DNA from: Mytilus californianus
Taxonomy: Eukaryota
Direction: 5' to 3'
Assembly: GCF_021869535.1 (NCBI RefSeq)
Contig: NW_026262712.1
Coordinates: 65,782,001-65,846,000, forward strand
Length of the DNA: 64,000 nt
Part shown: positions 14,060 through 21,011 of the stretch, piece after piece
How the letters are laid out: the number at the start of each line of letters is the position of its first letter
Position numbering within the stretch: position 1 is the first letter of the stretch
The notes under the pieces: generated by a model
The model's database searches: none
Told to the model about the DNA's origin: nothing
The model's input: only the letters and a program-made list of their open reading frames with translations
Translations under genes and position numbers: made by a program

Positions 14060-14700
14060 AAAACCTACCTGAGACCGCTTAAATGAGGGTGAGACCCCCC
14101 TGGTCTTTCAATGTCCATAAAAATTATTGTTATATAATAAAGATAAAACAAAAAGAGCGCTGGACACAGGGCAGGCGGTGTTGTCTCGATATCCCAATAG
14201 CATGAGTTCGAATCCCGTCGAGGGAAGAACAAAAATTTGCTTCCGCAAATTTGCAGATTTAACATTCTTGTGCTGATATTTAGAGTAATTATGAATATAA
14301 TATGTGTTTTCAGCCATGAATCACCTTCACTGGTGATCCAATGGATGGAGTTGTCACTTGTTTAGACGTACCTATCAAAATAATTATTTCTGTGACTGTA
14401 TCTTACGATCCTTTACGATAGATATTTAGCTAATCTGCAATCAATTCAATTTCAGGCCTAATATATCATGTACTGTGTTACAACTCTAGATTCTACTGAC
14501 GGGGAAAGGTAACACTAGGCCACTGAAAGCTGAATTATTAGTTCAGTCTAGGTGGCCGTGAAGTCTAGAGCGCTGGACACAGTGCAGGCGGTGTTGTCTC
14601 GATATCCCAATAGCATGAGTTCGAATCCCGGCGAGGGAAGAACAAAAATTTGCTTCGCAAATTTGCAGATTTAACATTGTTGTGCTGATATATAGAATAA
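14060..14700 (+). repeat. tRNA-head-containing repeat in tandem (413-bp period, ~1.4 units); other pieces at 12885-12995, 20870-20990 (inverted), 22435-22560
   Basis: GAGCGCTGGACACAG..GAGTTCGAATCCC at 14155 and 14568; A-box-like TGGCCGTGAAG near 14552. Confidence 0.7.
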
Positions 14701-15194
14701 TTATATATATATATATATATATAATTATATTTATGCTTTCCTCCTTCAACCCAAACAAACCACCAGTGGTTTAACATTCACTTGTGTGCGTCAGCAAGTA
14801 GCTTTTTTTACATTCTATTTGGGCAATGCATAAATAAAAAGAGAGACAAGAAGGTGAATTGTTTTGTACACTTTTAGGCGTTTATATAATTTATTTGTTG
14901 TGTATCTGTATCGTTACTCGTAACAATCCAGCGCCCTCGTAAGAAAGATCGTTGACTAATATCTAGACGTTTTATATATATATATATATAAATGCGGTTT
15001 TTATACAACGCAATCATAGCTTTGAATGTTGTTTTCAATTTAGACTTGTTTATATTTTTTCGTTTGGGCTTGTATTATATATTTGCCTTCGGGTTTATAT
15101 AATCCGTTCATCCTATTTTGACTCTTCAAAATTCAAGAGTCAATCCTTAATTGAGGTAAATTATATGGCCTACCAAATACCGTTTCGATTCCTA

Positions 15195-15238
15195 ACATCA
15201 CTGAAGAGACATTAATTGTCGAAATCGGGATATGGTGT
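15195..15238 (+). ncRNA. Minimal type I hammerhead ribozyme, unit 1 (core intact, stem III non-palindromic)
   Basis: ACATCA-CTGAAGA-GACA ttaat TGTC-GAAA-TCGGGA-TA-TGGTGT. Confidence 0.7.
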
Positions 15239-15698
15239 ACAAATTTTTGCACCTCATGTTTGCGGTATACCATCTTTTCCGCAAGTATATTGTTTTCTGT
15301 TTGGTATTAACTTAATAATTAAGATCCATTTTGTTAAATCTGGTGATCCGTTAAGAACATCCGTTGTTCGATCTGCTAGTCAAATGCGTTTTGTTAAAAT
15401 ATACTTTTTCACTTTTTTGGTCTTTTGGAAAATGTTGTTTGTGCTGTATTTAGACCCCTCTAACAAGAACTTTGTTTTGCATGCACACGTATAAAAATTG
15501 CGGTTTTTATCCAACCCAATCATAGTTTTGAACGTTGTTTTCAATTTAGACTTGTTTATATTTTTTCGTTTGGGCTTGTTTTATATTTGCCTTCGGGTTT
15601 ATATGATCCGTTCATCCAATTTTGACTCCTCAAAATTCAAGAGTCTTTCCCAAATTGAGGTAGATTGTATGGCTTTCCAAAAACCGTTTCGATTCCTA

Positions 15699-15741
15699 AC
15701 ATCACTGAAGAGACATCAATTGTCGAAATCCGGATATGTGT
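15699..15741 (+). ncRNA. Minimal type I hammerhead ribozyme, unit 2 (intact core)
   Basis: ACATCA-CTGAAGA-GACA tcaat TGTC-GAAA-TCCGGA-TA-TGTGT (stem I with one bulge). Confidence 0.75.
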
Positions 15742-16235
15742 ACAAAAACATTTGCACCTTTTTTTGCGGTATACCATCTTTTCCGCAAGTTTATTGTTTT
15801 CTGTTTAGTATTAAATTTATAATTGTGATCCATTTATTACATCGGTGATCCGTTTATTTGGCAATCGCCAATGGCAGTCAGCAGGGTTTAAGAACATTTG
15901 TTGTTCGATCTGTTAGTCAAATGCGTTTTGTTAAAATATACTTTTTCACTTGTTTGGTCTTTTGGAAAATGTTGTTTGTGCTGTATTTAGACCCCTCTAA
16001 CAAGAAATTTGTTTTGCATGCACACGTATAAAAATTGCGGTTTTTATCCAACTCAATCATAGGTTTGAACGTTGTTTTAAATTTAGGCTTGTTTATATTT
16101 TTTCGTTTGGGCTTGTATTATATTTGCCTTAGGGTTTATATGATCCGTTCATCCTATTTTGACTCTTCAAAATTCAAGAGTCTATCCCAAATTGAGGTAA
16201 ATTGTATGGCTTTCCAAAAACCGTTTCGATTCCTA

Positions 16236-16278
16236 ACATCACTGAAGAGACATCAATTTTCGAAATCCGGATATGTGT
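16236..16278 (+). ncRNA. Hammerhead unit 3 (core intact, stem II mismatch)
   Basis: CTGAAGA-GACA tcaat TTTC-GAAA-TCCGGA-TA. Confidence 0.55.
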
Positions 16279-16773
16279 ACAAAAACATTTGCACCTTTTT
16301 TTTGCGGTATACCATCTTTTCCGCAAGTTTATTGTTTTCTGTTTAGTATTAAATTTATGATTAAGATCCATTCATTACATCGGTGATCCGTTTATTTGGC
16401 AATCGCCAATGGCAGTCAGCAGGGTTTAAGAACATTTGTTGTTCGACCTGTTAGTCAAATGCGTTTTGTTAAAATATACTTTTTCACTTTTTTGGTCTTT
16501 TGGAACATGTTGTTTGTGCTGTATTTAGACCCCTCTAACAAGAATTTTTTTTTGCATGCACACGTATAAAAATTGCGGTTTTTATCCAACGCAATCATAG
16601 GTTTGAATGTTGTTTTCAATTTAGGCTTGTTTATATTTTTTCGTTTGGGCTTGTATTATATTTGCCTTAGGGTTTAAATGATCCGTTCATCCTATTTTGA
16701 CTCCTCAAAGTTCAAGAGTCTATCCTAAATTGAGGTAAATTGTTGGGCTTTCAAAATACCGTTTTGATTCCTA

Positions 16774-16817
16774 ACATCAATGAAGATACATTGTTTGTCA
16801 AAATCCGGATATGGTGT
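16774..16817 (+). pseudogene. Hammerhead unit 4, core mutated
   Basis: ATGAAGA instead of CTGAAGA and AAAA instead of GAAA. Confidence 0.7.
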
Positions 16818-17304
16818 ACAAAAACCTTTGCACCTTTCGTTTGCGGTATATAATCTTTTCTGCAAGTTTATTGTTTTCTGTTTAGTATTAAATTTTAAAT
16901 TGTGATCCATTTATTACATCGGTGATCCGTTTATTTGGCAATCGCCAATGGCAGTCAGCAGGGTTTAGGAACATTTGTTGTTCGACCTGTTAGTCAAATG
17001 CGTTTTGTTAAAATATACTTTTTCACTTTTTTGGTGAAAATGTTGTTTGTGCTGTATTTAGACCCCTCTAACAAGAAATTTGTTTTGCATGCACACGTAT
17101 AAAAATTGCGGTTTTTATCCAACGCAATCATAGGTTTGAACGTTGTTTTCAATTTAGACTTGTTTATATTTTTCGTTTGGGCTTGTATTATATTTGCCTT
17201 CGGGTTTATATGATCCGTTAATCCAATTTTGACTCCTCAAAATTCAAGAGTCTATCCCAAATTGAGATAAATTGTATGACTTTCCAAAACCGTTTCGATT
17301 CCTA

Positions 17305-17347
17305 ACATCACTGAAGAGACATCAATTGTCGAAATCCGGATATGTGT
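17305..17347 (+). ncRNA. Minimal type I hammerhead ribozyme, unit 5 (intact core)
   Basis: ACATCA-CTGAAGA-GACA tcaat TGTC-GAAA-TCCGGA-TA-TGTGT. Confidence 0.75.
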
Positions 17348-17841
17348 ACAAAAACATTTGTACCTTTTGTTTGCGGTATATCATCTTTTCCGCAAGTTTA
17401 TTGTTTTCTGTTTAGTATTAAATTTATAATTAAGATCCATTTATAACATCGGTGATCCGTTTATTTGGCAATCGCCAATGGCAGTCAGCAGGGTTTAAGA
17501 ACATTTGTTGTTCGACCTGTTAGTTAAATGCGTTTTGTTAAAATATACTTTTTCACTTTTTAGGTCTTTTGGAAAATGTTGTTTGTGCTGTATTTAGACC
17601 CCTCTAACAAGAAATTTGTTTTGCATGTACACGTATAAAAATTGCGGTTTTTATCCAACGCAATCATAGGTTTGAACGTTGTTTTTAATTTAGACTTGTT
17701 TATATTTTTCGTTTGGGCTTGTATTATATTTGCCTTCGGGTTTATATGATCCGTTCATCCAATTTTAACTCCTCAAAATTCATGAGTCTTTCCCAAATTG
17801 AGGTAAATTGTATAGCTTTCCAAAAACCGTTTCGATTCCTA

Positions 17842-17885
17842 ACATCACTGGAAAGACATTATATGTCGAAATCCAGATATGGTGT
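17842..17885 (+). pseudogene. Hammerhead unit 6, core mutated
   Basis: CTGGAAA instead of CTGAAGA; stem III TCCAGA. Confidence 0.7.
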
Positions 17886-18376
17886 ACAAAAACATTTGCA
17901 CCTTTTGTTTGCGGTATATCGTCTTTTCTGCAAGTTTATTGTTTTCTGTTTAGTATTAAATTTAAAATTATGATCGATTTATTACATCGGTGATCTGTTT
18001 ATTTGGCAATCGCCAATGGCAGTCAGCAGGGTTTAAGAACATTTGTTGTTCGACCTGTTAGTCAAATGCGTTTTGTTAAAATATACTGTTTCACTTTTTT
18101 GGTGAAAATGTTGTTTGTGCTGTATTTAGACCCCTCTAACAAGAAATTTGTTTTGCATGCACACGTATAAAAATTGCGGTTTTTATCCAACGACGCAATC
18201 ATAGGTTTGAACGTTGTTTTCAATTTAGACTTGTTTATATTTTTCGTTTGGGCTTGTATTATATTTGCCTTCGGGTTTATATGGTCCGTTCAGCCAATTT
18301 TGACTCCTCAAAATTCAAGAGTCTATCCCAAATTGAGGTAAATTGTATGGCTTTCCAAAAACCGTTTCGATTCCTA

Positions 18377-18419
18377 ACATCACTGAAGAGACATCAATTG
18401 TCGAAATCCGGATATGTGT
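18377..18419 (+). ncRNA. Minimal type I hammerhead ribozyme, unit 7 (intact core)
   Basis: ACATCA-CTGAAGA-GACA tcaat TGTC-GAAA-TCCGGA-TA-TGTGT. Confidence 0.75.
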
Positions 18420-18914
18420 ACAAAAACATTGCACCTTTTTTTTGCGGTAAAACATCTTTTCCGCAAGTTTATTGTTTTCTGTTTAGTATTAAATTGATCA
18501 TTAAGATCCAATTATTACATCGGTGATCCGTTTATTTGGCAATCGCCAATGGCAGTAAGCAGGGTTTAAGAACATTTGTTGTTCGACCTGTTAGGCAAAT
18601 GCGTTTTATTAAAATATACTTTTTCACTTTTTTGGTCTTTTGGAAAATGTTGTTTGTGCTGTATTAAGACCCCTCTAACAACAAATTTGATTTTGCATGC
18701 ACACGTATAAAAATTGCGGTTTTTATCCAACGCAATCATAGGTTTGATCGTTGTTTTCAATTTAGACTTGTTTATATTTTTTCGTTTGGGCTTGTATTAT
18801 ATTTGTCTTCGGGTTTATATGGTCCGTTCAGCCAATTTTGACTCCTCAAAATTCAAGAGGCTATCCCAAATTGAGATAAATTGTATGAATTTCCAAAAAC
18901 CGTTTCGATTCCTA

Positions 18915-18957
18915 ACATCACTGAAGAGACATCAATTGTCGAAATCCGGATATGTGT
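18915..18957 (+). ncRNA. Minimal type I hammerhead ribozyme, unit 8 (intact core)
   Basis: ACATCA-CTGAAGA-GACA tcaat TGTC-GAAA-TCCGGA-TA-TGTGT. Confidence 0.75.
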
Positions 18958-19453
18958 ACAAAAACATTTGCACCTTTTTTTTTGCGGTATACCATCTTTT
19001 CCGCAAGTTTATTGTTTTCTGTTTAGTATTAAATTTATAATTAAGATCCATTTATTACATCGGTGATAAACTTATTTGGCAATCGCCAACGGCAGTCAGC
19101 AGGGTTAAAGAACATTTGTTGTTCGACCTGTTAGTCAAATGCATTTTGTTAAAATATACTTTTTCACTTTTTTGGTCTTTTGGAAAATGTTGTTTGTGCT
19201 GTATTTAGACCCCTCTAACAAGAAATTTGTTTTGCATGCACACGTATAAAAATTGCGGTTTTTATCCAACGCAATCATAGGTTTGAACGTTGTTTTCAAT
19301 TTAGGCTTGTTTATATTTTTTCGTTTGGGCTTGTATTATATTTGCCTTAGGGTTTATATGATCCGTTCATCCTATTTTGACTCTTCAAAATTCAAGAGTC
19401 TATCCTAAATTGAGGTAAATTGTTGGGCTTTCAAAATATCGTTTCGATTCCTA

Positions 19454-19497
19454 ACATCACTGAAGAGACATTGTTTGTTGAAATCCGGATATGGTGT
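19454..19497 (+). ncRNA. Minimal type I hammerhead ribozyme, unit 9 (intact core, full 6-bp stem I)
   Basis: ACATCA-CTGAAGA-GACA ttgtt TGTT-GAAA-TCCGGA-TA-TGGTGT (G-U at base of stem II). Confidence 0.75.
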
Positions 19498-19991
19498 ACA
19501 AAAACCTTTGCACCTTTTGTTTGCGGTATATCATATTTTCCGCAAGTTTATTGTTTTCTGTTTAGTATCAAATTTATAATCATGATCCATTTATTACATC
19601 GGTGATCCGTTTATTTGGCAATCGTCAATGGCAGTCAGCAGGGTTTAAGAACATTTGTTGTTCGACCTGTTAGTCAAATGCGTTTTGTTAAAATATACTT
19701 TTTCACTTTTTTGGACATTTTGAAAATGTTGTTTGTGCTGTATTTAGACCCCTCTAACAAGAAATTTGTTTTGCATGCACACGTATAAAAATTGCGGTTT
19801 TTATCCAACGCAATCATAGGTTTGAACGTTGTTTTCAATTTAGACTTGTTTATATTTTTCGTTTGGGCTTGTATCATATTTGACTCCGGGTTTATATGAT
19901 CCGTTCATCCAATGTTGACTCTTCAAAATTCAAGAGTCTATCCCAAATTGAGGTAAATTGTATGGCTTTCCCAAAACCGTTTCGATTCCTA

Positions 19992-20035
19992 ACATCACTG
20001 AAAAGACATTATTTGTCGAAATCCAGATATGGTGT
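19992..20035 (+). pseudogene. Hammerhead unit 10, core mutated
   Basis: CTGAAAA (G8 to A); stem III TCCAGA. Confidence 0.7.
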
Positions 20036-20377
20036 ACAAAAACATTTGCACCTTTTGTTTGCGGTATATCATCTTTTCTGCAAGTTTATTGTTTTCTGTT
20101 TAGTATTAAATTTAAAATTATGATCGATTTATTACATCGGTGATCTGTTTATTTGGCAATCGCCAATGGCAGTCAGCAGGGTTTAAGAACATTTGTTGTT
20201 CGACCTGTTAGTCAAATGCGTTTTGTTAAAATATACTGTTTCACTTTTTGGTGAAAATGTTGTTTGTGCTGTATTTAGACCCCTCTAAGATGAAATTTGT
20301 TTTGCATGCACACGTATAAAAATTGCGGTTTTTATCCAACGCAATCATAGGTTTGAACGTTGTTTTCGATTAAGACT

Positions 20378-20410
<33 letters not shown>
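20378..20410. repeat. (TA)n microsatellite at right edge of array
   Basis: Direct sequence. Confidence 0.95.
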
Positions 20411-20415
<5 letters not shown>

Positions 20416-21011
20416 GTACAAATTGTAATGTTGTACAAATTATAATTTGTACAGAGTTTTTGTACAAGTTATTAGTGTTTTATGAACCGCTTAACACTAA
20501 TGGATGATGCAAGCACACAGTCTTTTGTTTCGCATATTTCTGTCATATTTCCATGACTACATGATACAGGTTAATACTGAGCATTGATAAAAAACATTAG
20601 AAGAACACATTGGATATGATTTCGATATAAGGAGAAAAATAAAAATTGAATTTAAACCATTCAGGTGTCCTTATTTCCAGTTTGAGGACAAGGAGAATAG
20701 CACTAAATTTTAGGTTGAAGTATATAAATTTGAATTTAAGACATTAAACTGATACATTTTAGAAGATAAACTTTTATTACCTGGTGCAAAAAGGTATGTG
20801 TCAAAAAACTTATAACTTGTACAAAAACCCTGTACAAATTATAATTTGTACAAAATTACATCTTGGACACAACATATATACAACTCGTCTTAACATCAGC
20901 CCAACAATGTTAGATCTGTAAATTTGCTTTCGCAAATTTTTTGTTCTTCCCTCGCCGGGATTCGAACTCATGCTACTGAGATATCGTGACACACATATAT
21001 ATATATATATA

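What the first reader, a model, noticed from the sequence alone, without database searches (positions are those of the whole stretch)
14990..20380. What looks like a satellite is a tandem array of self-cleaving hammerhead ribozymes: a candidate ~538-nt retrozyme/circRNA family
Seen: every unit contains ACATCA (stem I) - CUGAAGA - GACA/UGUC (stem II) - GAAA - UCCGGA (stem III) - UA - UG(G)UGU (stem I'). All invariant hammerhead core nucleotides are present in 7 of 10 units, and the cleavage triplet is AUA. Stem III is a perfect 6-nt palindrome. Established: minimal type I hammerheads with short palindromic stem III are thought to act as dimers, which tandem copies allow. Tandem 'non-LTR retrozymes' giving abundant small circRNAs are reported from metazoans including mussel (Cervera and de la Pena). 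Inference: as I recall, reported monomers are about 400 nt or shorter, so a 535-539-nt unit with UCCGGA/AUA may be an undescribed family. A + strand transcript would be cut after 15232, 15736, 17342, 18414, 18952 and 19491, releasing circularisable 538/539-nt monomers from units 7-9.
Basis: partly seen in the sequence, partly recalled or inferred. Interest (0 to 1): 0.9.

Follow-up and report, generated by a model that had tools for sequence, protein, structure and literature searches.

The report
Mussel hammerhead-ribozyme retrozyme array
This is one old, partly decayed copy of a very abundant non-coding jumping element of a mussel genome; its ~538-base repeats each carry a hammerhead self-cutting RNA motif, so it is a new family of an already known kind (animal retrozymes), and its insertion scars hint at how such elements are copied.

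Summary
Window 14985-20386 is a head-to-tail array of about 10 units of ~538 bp. Each unit carries a type I hammerhead motif on the + strand. The core is complete in 7 of 10 units and the full fold in 5 of 10.

The motif is not chance. A descriptor found 0 hits in 20 Mb of composition-matched random sequence. The motif has the same architecture as the biochemically validated Mytilus Mg353 retrozyme hammerhead, and 6 of 14 pairs differ on both sides.

The family is not a classical satellite:
- The hammerhead occurs about 16,500 times in this 1.65-Gb genome.
- There are about 6,300 dispersed elements.
- All elements end at the same internal unit position (363) on a (TA)n tract.
- The 5' ends vary.

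This is a target-primed reverse-transcription signature at (TA)n, the target preferred by some Penelope-like elements.

RNA of the hammerhead-sense strand is present in public RNA-seq. Reads run through the predicted cut site, so cleavage and circles are not shown.

The family does differ from the published mussel one.

Verdict: new member of a known kind. The scan already met this family elsewhere in this genome (s1-302474, s1-274892).

The parts
14985..20386 (+). One inserted element of the ~538-bp hammerhead family: 5'-truncated first unit (unit positions ~292-538), 9 full units (one 504 bp with a 35-bp deletion), and a last partial unit ending at unit position 363
14973..14989 (.). (TA)n tract abutting the 5' end of the element (target microsatellite, 5' side). 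The exact boundary is ambiguous by a few bases because the unit reads TATAAA here
20380..20411 (.). (TA)n tract directly after the family's fixed 3' terminus (unit position 363, ...AGACTTGTATATAT)
15195..15238 (+). Hammerhead 1: core and helices intact, loop 3 CGGG (palindrome broken), helix I UGGUGU. Predicted cut after 15232
15699..15741 (+). Hammerhead 2: passes the full descriptor. Helix I 3' strand is UGUGU (one base shorter, so a bulge). Predicted cut after 15736
16236..16278 (+). Hammerhead 3: core intact, helix II 3 of 4 pairs (UGUC to UUUC). Equivalent site after 16273
16774..16817 (+). Hammerhead 4: dead (C3 to A, G10.1 to U, G12 to A). Equivalent site after 16811
17305..17347 (+). 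Hammerhead 5: passes the full descriptor. Predicted cut after 17342
17842..17886 (+). Hammerhead 6: dead (CUGGAAA; CCGG to CCAG). Equivalent site after 17879
18377..18419 (+). Hammerhead 7: passes the full descriptor. Predicted cut after 18414
18915..18957 (+). Hammerhead 8: passes the full descriptor. Predicted cut after 18952
19454..19497 (+). Hammerhead 9: core intact but G10.1-U11.1 (CpG transition), helix I UGGUGU. Possible cut after 19491
19992..20035 (+). Hammerhead 10: dead (G8 to A; CCGG to CCAG). Equivalent site after 20029

Best explanation
The array is one insertion of a non-coding, non-autonomous retroelement of the animal 'non-LTR retrozyme' kind, in a Mytilus-type mussel genome.

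Shown here:
- Each ~538-bp unit encodes on the + strand a canonical-architecture type I hammerhead. Helix I has 6 bp. Helix II has 4 bp and a 5-nt loop. Helix III has 2 bp and a palindromic CCGG loop. The cleavage triplet is AUA.
- The family numbers about 16,500 hammerheads in about 6,300 or more dispersed elements.
- Every element ends at the same internal unit position on a (TA)n tract. The 5' ends are variable, and many of them also abut (TA)n.
- RNA of the hammerhead-sense strand exists.

Inferred life cycle:
1. Arrays are transcribed.
2. Two neighbouring hammerheads pair through the 8-nt palindrome AUCCGGAU into a double hammerhead and cut after A17.
3. [quoted passage not shown]
4. A reverse transcriptase from an autonomous element that nicks (TA)n primes from the nicked DNA, annealed to the UAUAU at unit positions ~359-363. 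A Penelope-like element is the leading candidate for that element.
5. It copies an endless (circular) or multimeric template for a variable distance. This gives 5'-truncated multimers.

Arrays later change by unequal exchange (higher-order repeats) and decay by CpG transitions. The window's copy is such an old, partly inactivated element.
For: Motif:
- 5 of 10 sites pass the full descriptor, against 0 in 20 Mb of random sequence.
- Rfam Hammerhead_1 is the best family for the motif and aligns over its full length in the right register, at 22.4 bits for the UGGUGU variant. The biochemically validated Mg353 hammerhead of the same genome also falls below the gathering score, at 32.5 against 34.
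- Aligned with Mg353-type hammerheads, 98.2% of cells pair and 6 of 14 pairs are changed on both sides. Slid controls pair at 14-48%.
- Between arrays, and in a second species' RNA, the hammerhead varies only in loop 2.

Dimer:
- The monomeric hammerhead fold costs +3.1 kcal/mol, against an MFE of -6.8.
- Two copies cofold at -20.3, against 2 x -7.2, through an 8-bp intermolecular helix III.

Mobility:
- The hammerhead occurs 16,513 times at <=2 mismatches, with 0 for the control pattern.
- Isolated hits also lie in 538-bp units.
- About 24 of 33 element ends in the loci I hold lie at unit position 363 followed by (TA)n. The 5' starts are spread over the unit.
- Genome-wide there are 6,269 terminus-(TA)n junctions (control 20) and 13,904 internal junctions.
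- Tail-to-tail pairs share one (TA)n. There is one head-to-head junction.
- The flanks are otherwise unrelated, apart from other elements that end on (TA)n.
- (TA)n is the reported preferred target of Neptune and Naiad Penelope-like elements (PMC8557442).
- Intact Penelope-like ORFs with their own minimal hammerheads are present in the genome.

RNA:
- Reads are present in four RNA runs.
- In two stranded runs of a related species the first mate lies 2.5- to 20-fold more often on the - strand. That means + sense RNA.

Other features:
- No conserved ORF.
- GC 33%.
Against: - No read-end pile at the predicted cut site, and reads run through it. This is compatible with circles or with uncut RNA.
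- Circularity cannot be tested from junction reads, because the genomic copies are tandem.
- The whole unit folds no better than shuffled sequence as a circle (z = -0.5 to +0.1). Published retrozyme circles are described as highly self-paired.
- None of 30 Penelope-like loci shows homology to the unit. The commonest Penelope-like family is followed by (TA)n at only 2 of 7 free ends, so the partner is not identified.
- Perfect 4-unit higher-order repeats show that DNA-level amplification also shapes arrays.
- The Rfam gathering score is not reached.
- In run X21, probably the window's own species, the two read directions are equal. That run could be unstranded or could contain DNA.
Confidence: 0.72

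Rival explanations
1. SINE-like retroposon without a circular stage. Long uncut or partly cut linear array transcripts are the templates. The reverse transcriptase starts internally at the UAUAU of any unit by microhomology with nicked (TA)n. The hammerhead only trims transcripts, as proposed for Penelope-like elements, or is a relic of the parent element.
For: - Reads cross the cut site, and no ends pile up there.
- The whole-unit fold is unremarkable.
- Arrays with diverged neighbouring units and 4-unit higher-order repeats are what a copy of a genomic multimer would look like.
- The monomeric hammerhead is predicted to be unstable.
Against: - Several arrays are 98-99.8% uniform inside, against 93.4% between arrays. 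A single small template copied round and round would give this.
- The hammerhead fold is kept through compensatory changes relative to Mg353. It also varies only in loop 2 across subfamilies and species.
- The closely similar Mg353 family was shown to accumulate as circles (PMC7229834).
Confidence: 0.2
2. Ordinary satellite DNA spread and expanded at the DNA level by unequal crossing-over and segmental duplication. The hammerhead-like motif has no function.
For: - Higher-order repeats with perfect 4-unit periodicity.
- Half of the window's hammerheads are mutated.
- No Rfam match at gathering score.
Against: - About 6,300 dispersed termini at one unit position, with variable 5' ends.
- 0 descriptor hits in 20 Mb of random sequence.
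- Compensatory pairs against a validated ribozyme.
- Strand-biased RNA.
Confidence: 0.05
3. Tandem repeats carried by a DNA transposon, Helitron or Helentron, as described for oyster satellite-like arrays.
For: - Bivalve precedent (PMC7492417, listed).
- Insertion next to TA-rich DNA.
Against: - After masking the units, the flanks of 20 loci share no common element. The only shared sequences are separate repeats that themselves end on (TA)n, at variable distance and orientation.
- The arrays end inside the unit, not at a carrier's termini.
Confidence: 0.03

Closest known systems
Mytilus galloprovincialis non-LTR retrozyme (Mg353; hammerheads A and B) of Cervera and de la Pena 2020 (PMC7229834)
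   Same: - Same genome type. The Mg353 hammerhead occurs 10,262 times here.
- Identical hammerhead architecture: helix I 6 bp, helix II 4 bp with a 5-nt loop, helix III 2 bp with a 4-nt palindromic loop.
- AT-rich, non-coding tandem units in dispersed short arrays.
- Elements also end at a fixed internal unit position with variable 5' starts.
   Different: - No sequence similarity outside the core.
- Helices II and III differ by compensatory changes, and the cleavage triplet is AUA instead of GUC.
- The unit is ~538 bp against 350-390 bp.
- The 3' terminus lies 363 nt after the cut site against ~48 nt, and it sits on (TA)n, which the Mg353 ends I saw do not.
- More copies: 16,513 against 10,262.
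- Self-cleavage and circles were shown for Mg353 only.
Newt/salamander satellite 2 and axolotl retrozymes (HHR_Amex1/2)
   Same: - Type I hammerhead with a very weak helix III capped by a palindromic tetraloop, active as a double hammerhead in tandem transcripts.
- Tandem units of a few hundred bp.
   Different: - Different sequence and phylum.
- No recognisable loop 1-loop 2 tertiary contacts here. The same was noted for the published mussel hammerheads.
[quoted passage not shown]
   Same: - Type I hammerhead with a palindromic helix III, thought to act as a dimer.
- Tandem and inverted insertions, 5' truncation and a (TA)n target preference.
- The elements co-exist in this genome.
   Different: - The Penelope-like elements sampled here carry a different hammerhead, with a long 6-bp helix II and an extra base after position 9.
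- No homology to the 538-bp unit.
- The 538 family has no ORF.
Vertebrate non-LTR retrozymes as Penelope pLTR derivatives (Li, Clavereau and Pollet, bioRxiv 10.64898/2026.07.22.740005)
   Same: - Same kind of element.
- The consensus lengths of 51-972 bp include 538.
- Most families have few units per array.
- A Penelope partner is proposed.
   Different: That study did not cover molluscs. Homology of the retrozyme to a Penelope pLTR, its main argument, was not found here in 30 loci.

Membership tests
Hammerhead ribozyme, type I (Rfam RF00163) | Conserved core: C3 U4 G5 A6 N7 G8 A9, G12 A13 A14, A15.1-U16.1, H17 | tested here: met
   All present in 7 of 10 units of the window, and in most units of other arrays
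Hammerhead ribozyme, type I (Rfam RF00163) | Three helices around the core, with G10.1-C11.1 and an open helix I | tested here: met
   5 of 10 window sites pass the descriptor, against 0 in 20 Mb of random sequence. 98.2% of cells pair in an alignment with Mg353 hammerheads, and 6 pairs are changed on both sides
Hammerhead ribozyme, type I (Rfam RF00163) | Score at or above Rfam's gathering threshold (34 bits) | tested here: not met
   14.5-22.4 bits, and no hit in the whole-window scans. Control: the biochemically validated Mg353 hammerhead also fails, at 32.5 bits
Hammerhead ribozyme, type I (Rfam RF00163) | Site-specific self-cleavage after H17 | not testable with these tools
   RNA-seq shows no pile of ends at 18952/18953, and reads cross the site. 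Needs in vitro transcription of a dimer
Animal non-LTR retrozyme (Cervera and de la Pena 2020) | Short tandem repeats, each with a type I hammerhead, in dimers to multimers | tested here: met
Animal non-LTR retrozyme (Cervera and de la Pena 2020) | Low GC (<45-50%), no LTR, PBS or PPT, no coding capacity | tested here: met
   GC 0.32-0.33. Only short ORFs, not shared between units. The units are simple head-to-tail repeats
Animal non-LTR retrozyme (Cervera and de la Pena 2020) | Dispersed copies with signs of retrotransposition | tested here: met
   Hits on all large contigs. Fixed 3' terminus, variable 5' ends, 6,269 termini on (TA)n
Animal non-LTR retrozyme (Cervera and de la Pena 2020) | Expressed; accumulates as monomeric linear and circular RNA | tested here: inconclusive
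   RNA reads are present and are + sense in the stranded runs. Monomer size and circularity cannot be read from short reads on a tandem repeat
Penelope pLTR-derived non-autonomous element (Li et al. 2026) | Sequence homology of the unit to the pseudo-LTR or 3' region of an autonomous Penelope-like element of the same genome | tested here: inconclusive
   No homology in 30 GIY-YIG loci, which are mostly one family. The only similarity is a short AGAC...TAT tail next to (TA)n. More loci could not be fetched

The most novel reading that the evidence does not exclude
The fixed internal 3' terminus (unit position 363, UAUAU) on (TA)n, together with 5'-truncated multimers, may be the genomic footprint of target-primed rolling-circle reverse transcription of a ribozyme-made circRNA.

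The short tail motif (T/A)AGAC-N6-10-TAT(AT)n is also present at the ends of a resident Penelope-like element and of a separate short interspersed repeat. It would then mark the (TA)n-specific enzyme that all three use.

That would supply the 'conserved motif pointing to the partner' that the 2020 review says animal retrozymes lack (PMC7761336).
Probability: 0.3. Interest if true: 0.6.

Novelty: new member of a known kind. Interest (0 to 1): 0.4.

Why it matters
Animal retrozymes are a recently recognised source of abundant small circular RNAs. How they are copied back into DNA is unknown.

This family is the most numerous hammerhead family in this mussel genome, and I could not find it in the searchable literature.

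Its thousands of insertions share one exact 3' end on a (TA)n microsatellite. That gives a concrete, testable handle on the priming step and on the identity of the mobilising enzyme.

For genome annotation, what looks like a 538-bp satellite should be labelled as a retrozyme-type retroelement. It occupies roughly 0.5% of the genome (my estimate, from about 16,500 units of 538 bp).

Tried and rejected
- Rfam at gathering score on the whole window, and at E<=10 on 6.5 kb, gave nothing relevant. Only 91-nt searches brought up Hammerhead_1, below threshold.
- TRF cannot see periods above 500.
- A fuzzy-regex scan timed out.
- The whole-unit circular fold is not better than shuffles on either strand. 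No rod-like or viroid-like structure is claimed.
- The unit has no BLAST similarity to Mg353 loci or to 30 Penelope-like loci.
- Two cases of a 538 element just downstream of a Penelope ORF turned out to be separate insertions into the (TA)n after or inside the Penelope element. They are not chimeras.
- Carriage by a larger transposon is rejected.
- ARAGORN and Rfam find no tRNA in the array or in the flanking repeat.
- The 4-unit higher-order repeats of two arrays are not inherited from a common tetramer, because the distances between the arrays are uniform.
- The conservation profile along the unit has little power. The family is young, and my sample was partly chosen by exact hammerhead match.
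- A search of the literature for the exact hammerhead string found no paper.
- No paper on a Mytilus satellite or retrozyme of this unit was found.

Full report
**1. The observation**

The stretch is a head-to-tail array. The repeat finder reports 10 copies spaced 530-540 bp. A unit-by-unit alignment and BLAST of one unit place the element at window 14985-20386. It consists of:
- a first partial unit, beginning at about unit position 292 (numbering from the predicted cut site);
- nine full units, one of them 504 bp with a 35-bp deletion;
- a last partial unit, ending at unit position 363.

(TA)n tracts abut both ends.

All invariant hammerhead core nucleotides are present in 7 of 10 units. Two details need correcting.
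- The palindrome is the 8-mer AUCCGGAU, that is A15.1/U15.2, loop CCGG, A16.2/U16.1.
- Only 5 of 10 sites also keep a perfect helix II with G10.1-C11.1 and a usable helix I. Their cuts would fall after 15232, 15736, 17342, 18414 and 18952.

Several of the disabling changes are CpG transitions: GUCG to GUUG or GUCA, and CCGG to CCAG. This is what neutral decay of methylated DNA gives.

My descriptor found no site in 20 Mb of composition-matched random sequence. It found none elsewhere in the window on either strand.

**2. Is it a hammerhead?**

Rfam finds nothing at its gathering score. In 91-nt searches, Hammerhead_1 (RF00163) is the best family.
- For the UGGUGU helix I variant it aligns over all 45 model positions in the correct register, at 22.4 bits.
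- Window copies score 14.5-15.9 bits.

As a control I scored the hammerhead of the published mussel retrozyme Mg353, which self-cleaves in vitro (PMC7229834). It too is below threshold, at 32.5 against 34 bits. The Rfam failure therefore says little.

The two mussel hammerheads have the same element lengths throughout. When aligned:
- 98.2% of cells form standard pairs;
- 6 of 14 pairs differ on both sides: U-A/A-U twice in helix II, C-G/U-A in helix III, G-C/C-G in the palindromic loop, G-C/A-U in helix I, and a sixth in a single sequence;
- slid controls pair at 14-48%.

These are effectively two lineages, so each changed pair counts as one event.

Within the 538 family, and in RNA of a second species, the hammerhead varies only in loop 2.

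As a monomer the hammerhead fold is unfavourable, at +3.1 kcal/mol against an alternative of -6.8. Two copies cofold at -20.3, against 2 x -7.2, through an 8-bp intermolecular helix III. This is the classical double-hammerhead arrangement (PMC4209133).

**3. What the family is**

The genome is 1.65 Gb in 175 contigs. The Mg353 hammerhead occurs in it 10,262 times, so this is a Mytilus-type mussel. The sequencing-run search also returned a 'mollusc metagenome' RNA run.

The hammerhead of this finding occurs 16,513 times at up to 2 mismatches, with 0 for the control pattern. It lies on all large contigs, mostly in short arrays. Isolated hits also lie in 538-bp units.

In the loci I could read:
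- about 24 of 33 element ends lie at unit position 363, directly followed by (AT)n;
- that terminus reads ...TTTAGACTTGTTTATAT;
- the 5' ends are spread over the whole unit, and more than half also abut (TA)n.

Genome-wide there are 6,269 terminus-(TA)n junctions (control 20) and 13,904 internal junctions at the same unit position. That means at least about 6,300 separate elements, averaging about three units each.

Other structural points:
- Tail-to-tail pairs share one (TA)n.
- One head-to-head junction is visible in the hit list.
- After masking the units, the flanks share nothing except other repeats that themselves end on (TA)n. The arrays are therefore not cargo of a larger transposon.
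- There is no conserved ORF, and GC is 33%.

A fixed 3' end with variable 5' truncation is the signature of target-primed reverse transcription. The 3' end is not at the ribozyme cut site. The elements also continue across the 538|1 junction. The template therefore had that junction intact, so it was either a circle or an uncut multimer.

(TA)n is the reported preferred target of Neptune and Naiad Penelope-like elements, which also give tandem and inverted insertions (PMC8557442).

**4. The candidate partner**

The genome holds many Penelope-like copies with intact 755-911-aa frames. The commonest family carries its own minimal hammerhead, with a long helix II and an extra base after position 9. 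This hammerhead lies about 58 nt before that element's 3' end.

None of 30 such loci is homologous to the 538 unit. That family is followed by (TA)n at only 2 of 7 free ends. The partner is not identified.

A short tail resemblance exists between three kinds of element:
- the Penelope-like element: ATAAGAC...CATTAT;
- the 538 family: TTTAGAC...TTTATAT;
- a separate interspersed repeat: TTAAGAC...GTATAT.

All three tails lie next to (AT)n. I treat this as a hint only.

**5. RNA**

Only one read-laying run was allowed, so I laid one permuted unit (18690-19215) on three raw RNA-seq runs and one RNA contig set. All four hold the family.

- Two stranded runs (X22 and X23, another species label): the first mate lies on the - strand 2.5- to 20-fold more often. 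By the tool's note this means mostly + sense RNA, which is the hammerhead strand.
- Run X21, probably the window's own species: the two directions are equal. The library may be unstranded, or DNA may be present.
- Reads run through the predicted cut site, and the tool lists no place where molecules begin or end.
- The 'goes back' joints are what any tandem or circular template gives.

Transcription is therefore supported. Cleavage and circles are not shown and are not excluded.

As a circle, the whole unit folds no better than shuffled sequence (z = -0.5 to +0.1).

**6. Array dynamics**

Several arrays are 98-99.8% uniform inside, against 93.4% between arrays. One small template copied repeatedly would give this. 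So would recent local amplification.

Two arrays show perfect 4-unit higher-order repeats. These arose independently, so DNA-level unequal exchange also acts.

The window's array is as diverged inside (93.8%) as the family at large. It is an old copy. It could release at most the 504- and 538-nt monomers, perhaps a 539-nt one as well, plus a dimer and a trimer.

**7. Comparison with what is known, and novelty**

The kind is known:
- hammerhead satellites of newts since 1987;
- non-LTR retrozymes with circular RNAs in coral, mussel and axolotl (PMC7229834);
- Penelope-like elements as the suspected partners (PMC7229834; PMC7761336; bioRxiv 10.64898/2026.07.22.740005).

Circles of 150 to >1000 nt and consensus lengths of 51-972 bp are already reported.

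The family itself differs from the published mussel family in unit, helices, cleavage triplet and insertion site. I found no paper holding its hammerhead string, nor any paper describing it.

The 2020 review states that animal retrozymes show no conserved motif that points to their partner. The shared 3' terminus on (TA)n is therefore the most useful new detail.

The scan already met this family on other DNA of this genome. Note s1-302474 concerns 544-bp units, and its follow-up reached the same reading. Note s1-274892 concerns a 539-nt unit. I reached my reading before seeing these notes and tested it independently.

**8. Verdict**

The novelty is modest: a new member of a known kind, with a mechanistically informative insertion signature. 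Interest 0.4.

Noticed in passing
window 14154-14275 and 14568-14700 (+), 20874-20995 (-); also L009:181-851 and beside the arrays at G000:C1:102.33 Mb and C165:65.1 Mb: A separate short interspersed repeat with a tRNA T-arm-like GAGTTCGAATCCC motif. It ends in ...TTAAGACGAGTTGTATAT(AT)n, a tail resembling the 538 family's terminus. It lies near 4-5 of 20 arrays, probably because both insert at (TA)n. ARAGORN and Rfam do not call a tRNA.
   Followed up: partly
window 14493-14535 (+): A degenerate Penelope-type minimal hammerhead-like string (CTGACGGGG...CCACTGAAAGC) lies between the two copies of that flanking repeat, which are ~414 bp apart. An intact-looking relative stands in the Penelope-like locus L072:413.
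   Followed up: no
L013:1185-1951, L014:1489-1581, L015:1266-1574, L071: Elements of the published Mg353 retrozyme family also end at one fixed unit position (~45-54 nt after their cut site, ...GATGAGTTTAT) and have variable 5' starts. They are not followed by (TA)n. The fixed-3'-end signature may therefore be general for mussel retrozymes.
   Followed up: partly
G000:C165:65103462-65109154 (L003+L004) and G000:C1:46741631-46751132 (L018-L027): Perfect 4-unit higher-order repeats: units i and i+4 have 0 differences, while neighbours differ by 6-15 bases. In each array one unit of the four carries the same G5-to-A core mutation together with a C-to-A change at unit position 480. The two arrays' repeats are not otherwise homologous unit for unit.
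   Followed up: partly
L051-L070 (for example G000:C110:55838761-55862602): A Penelope-like family with many identical 755-aa open frames, in tandem (3,927-bp spacing) and in inverted pairs. It carries a minimal hammerhead (CUGAUGA-C-GGUGCC-CUAG-GGCACC-GAAA) about 58 nt before its 3' end. It looks recently active.
   Followed up: partly
5' ends of 30 elements in the loci: 8 of about 30 element 5' ends fall within unit positions 485-538/1, which is inside or just before the hammerhead and covers 10% of the unit. This could be a reverse-transcriptase stop at the structured ribozyme, a transcription start, or chance. The window was chosen post hoc.
   Followed up: no
every unit, e.g. window 18754-18804: Each unit holds a 24-25-nt imperfect internal duplication (TRF). 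The first copy (TTTAGACTTGTTTATAT) is the family's 3' terminus. One element (L002) ends at the second copy instead (unit position ~390).
   Followed up: partly
L054 (reverse strand) about 2850-2900: A decayed hammerhead (CUGAAAA...GUCGAAAU AAGC AUC|UGGUGC) lies next to Mg353-like sequence. It is intermediate in sequence between the Mg353 and 538-family hammerheads, which hints that the two ribozymes share ancestry.
   Followed up: no
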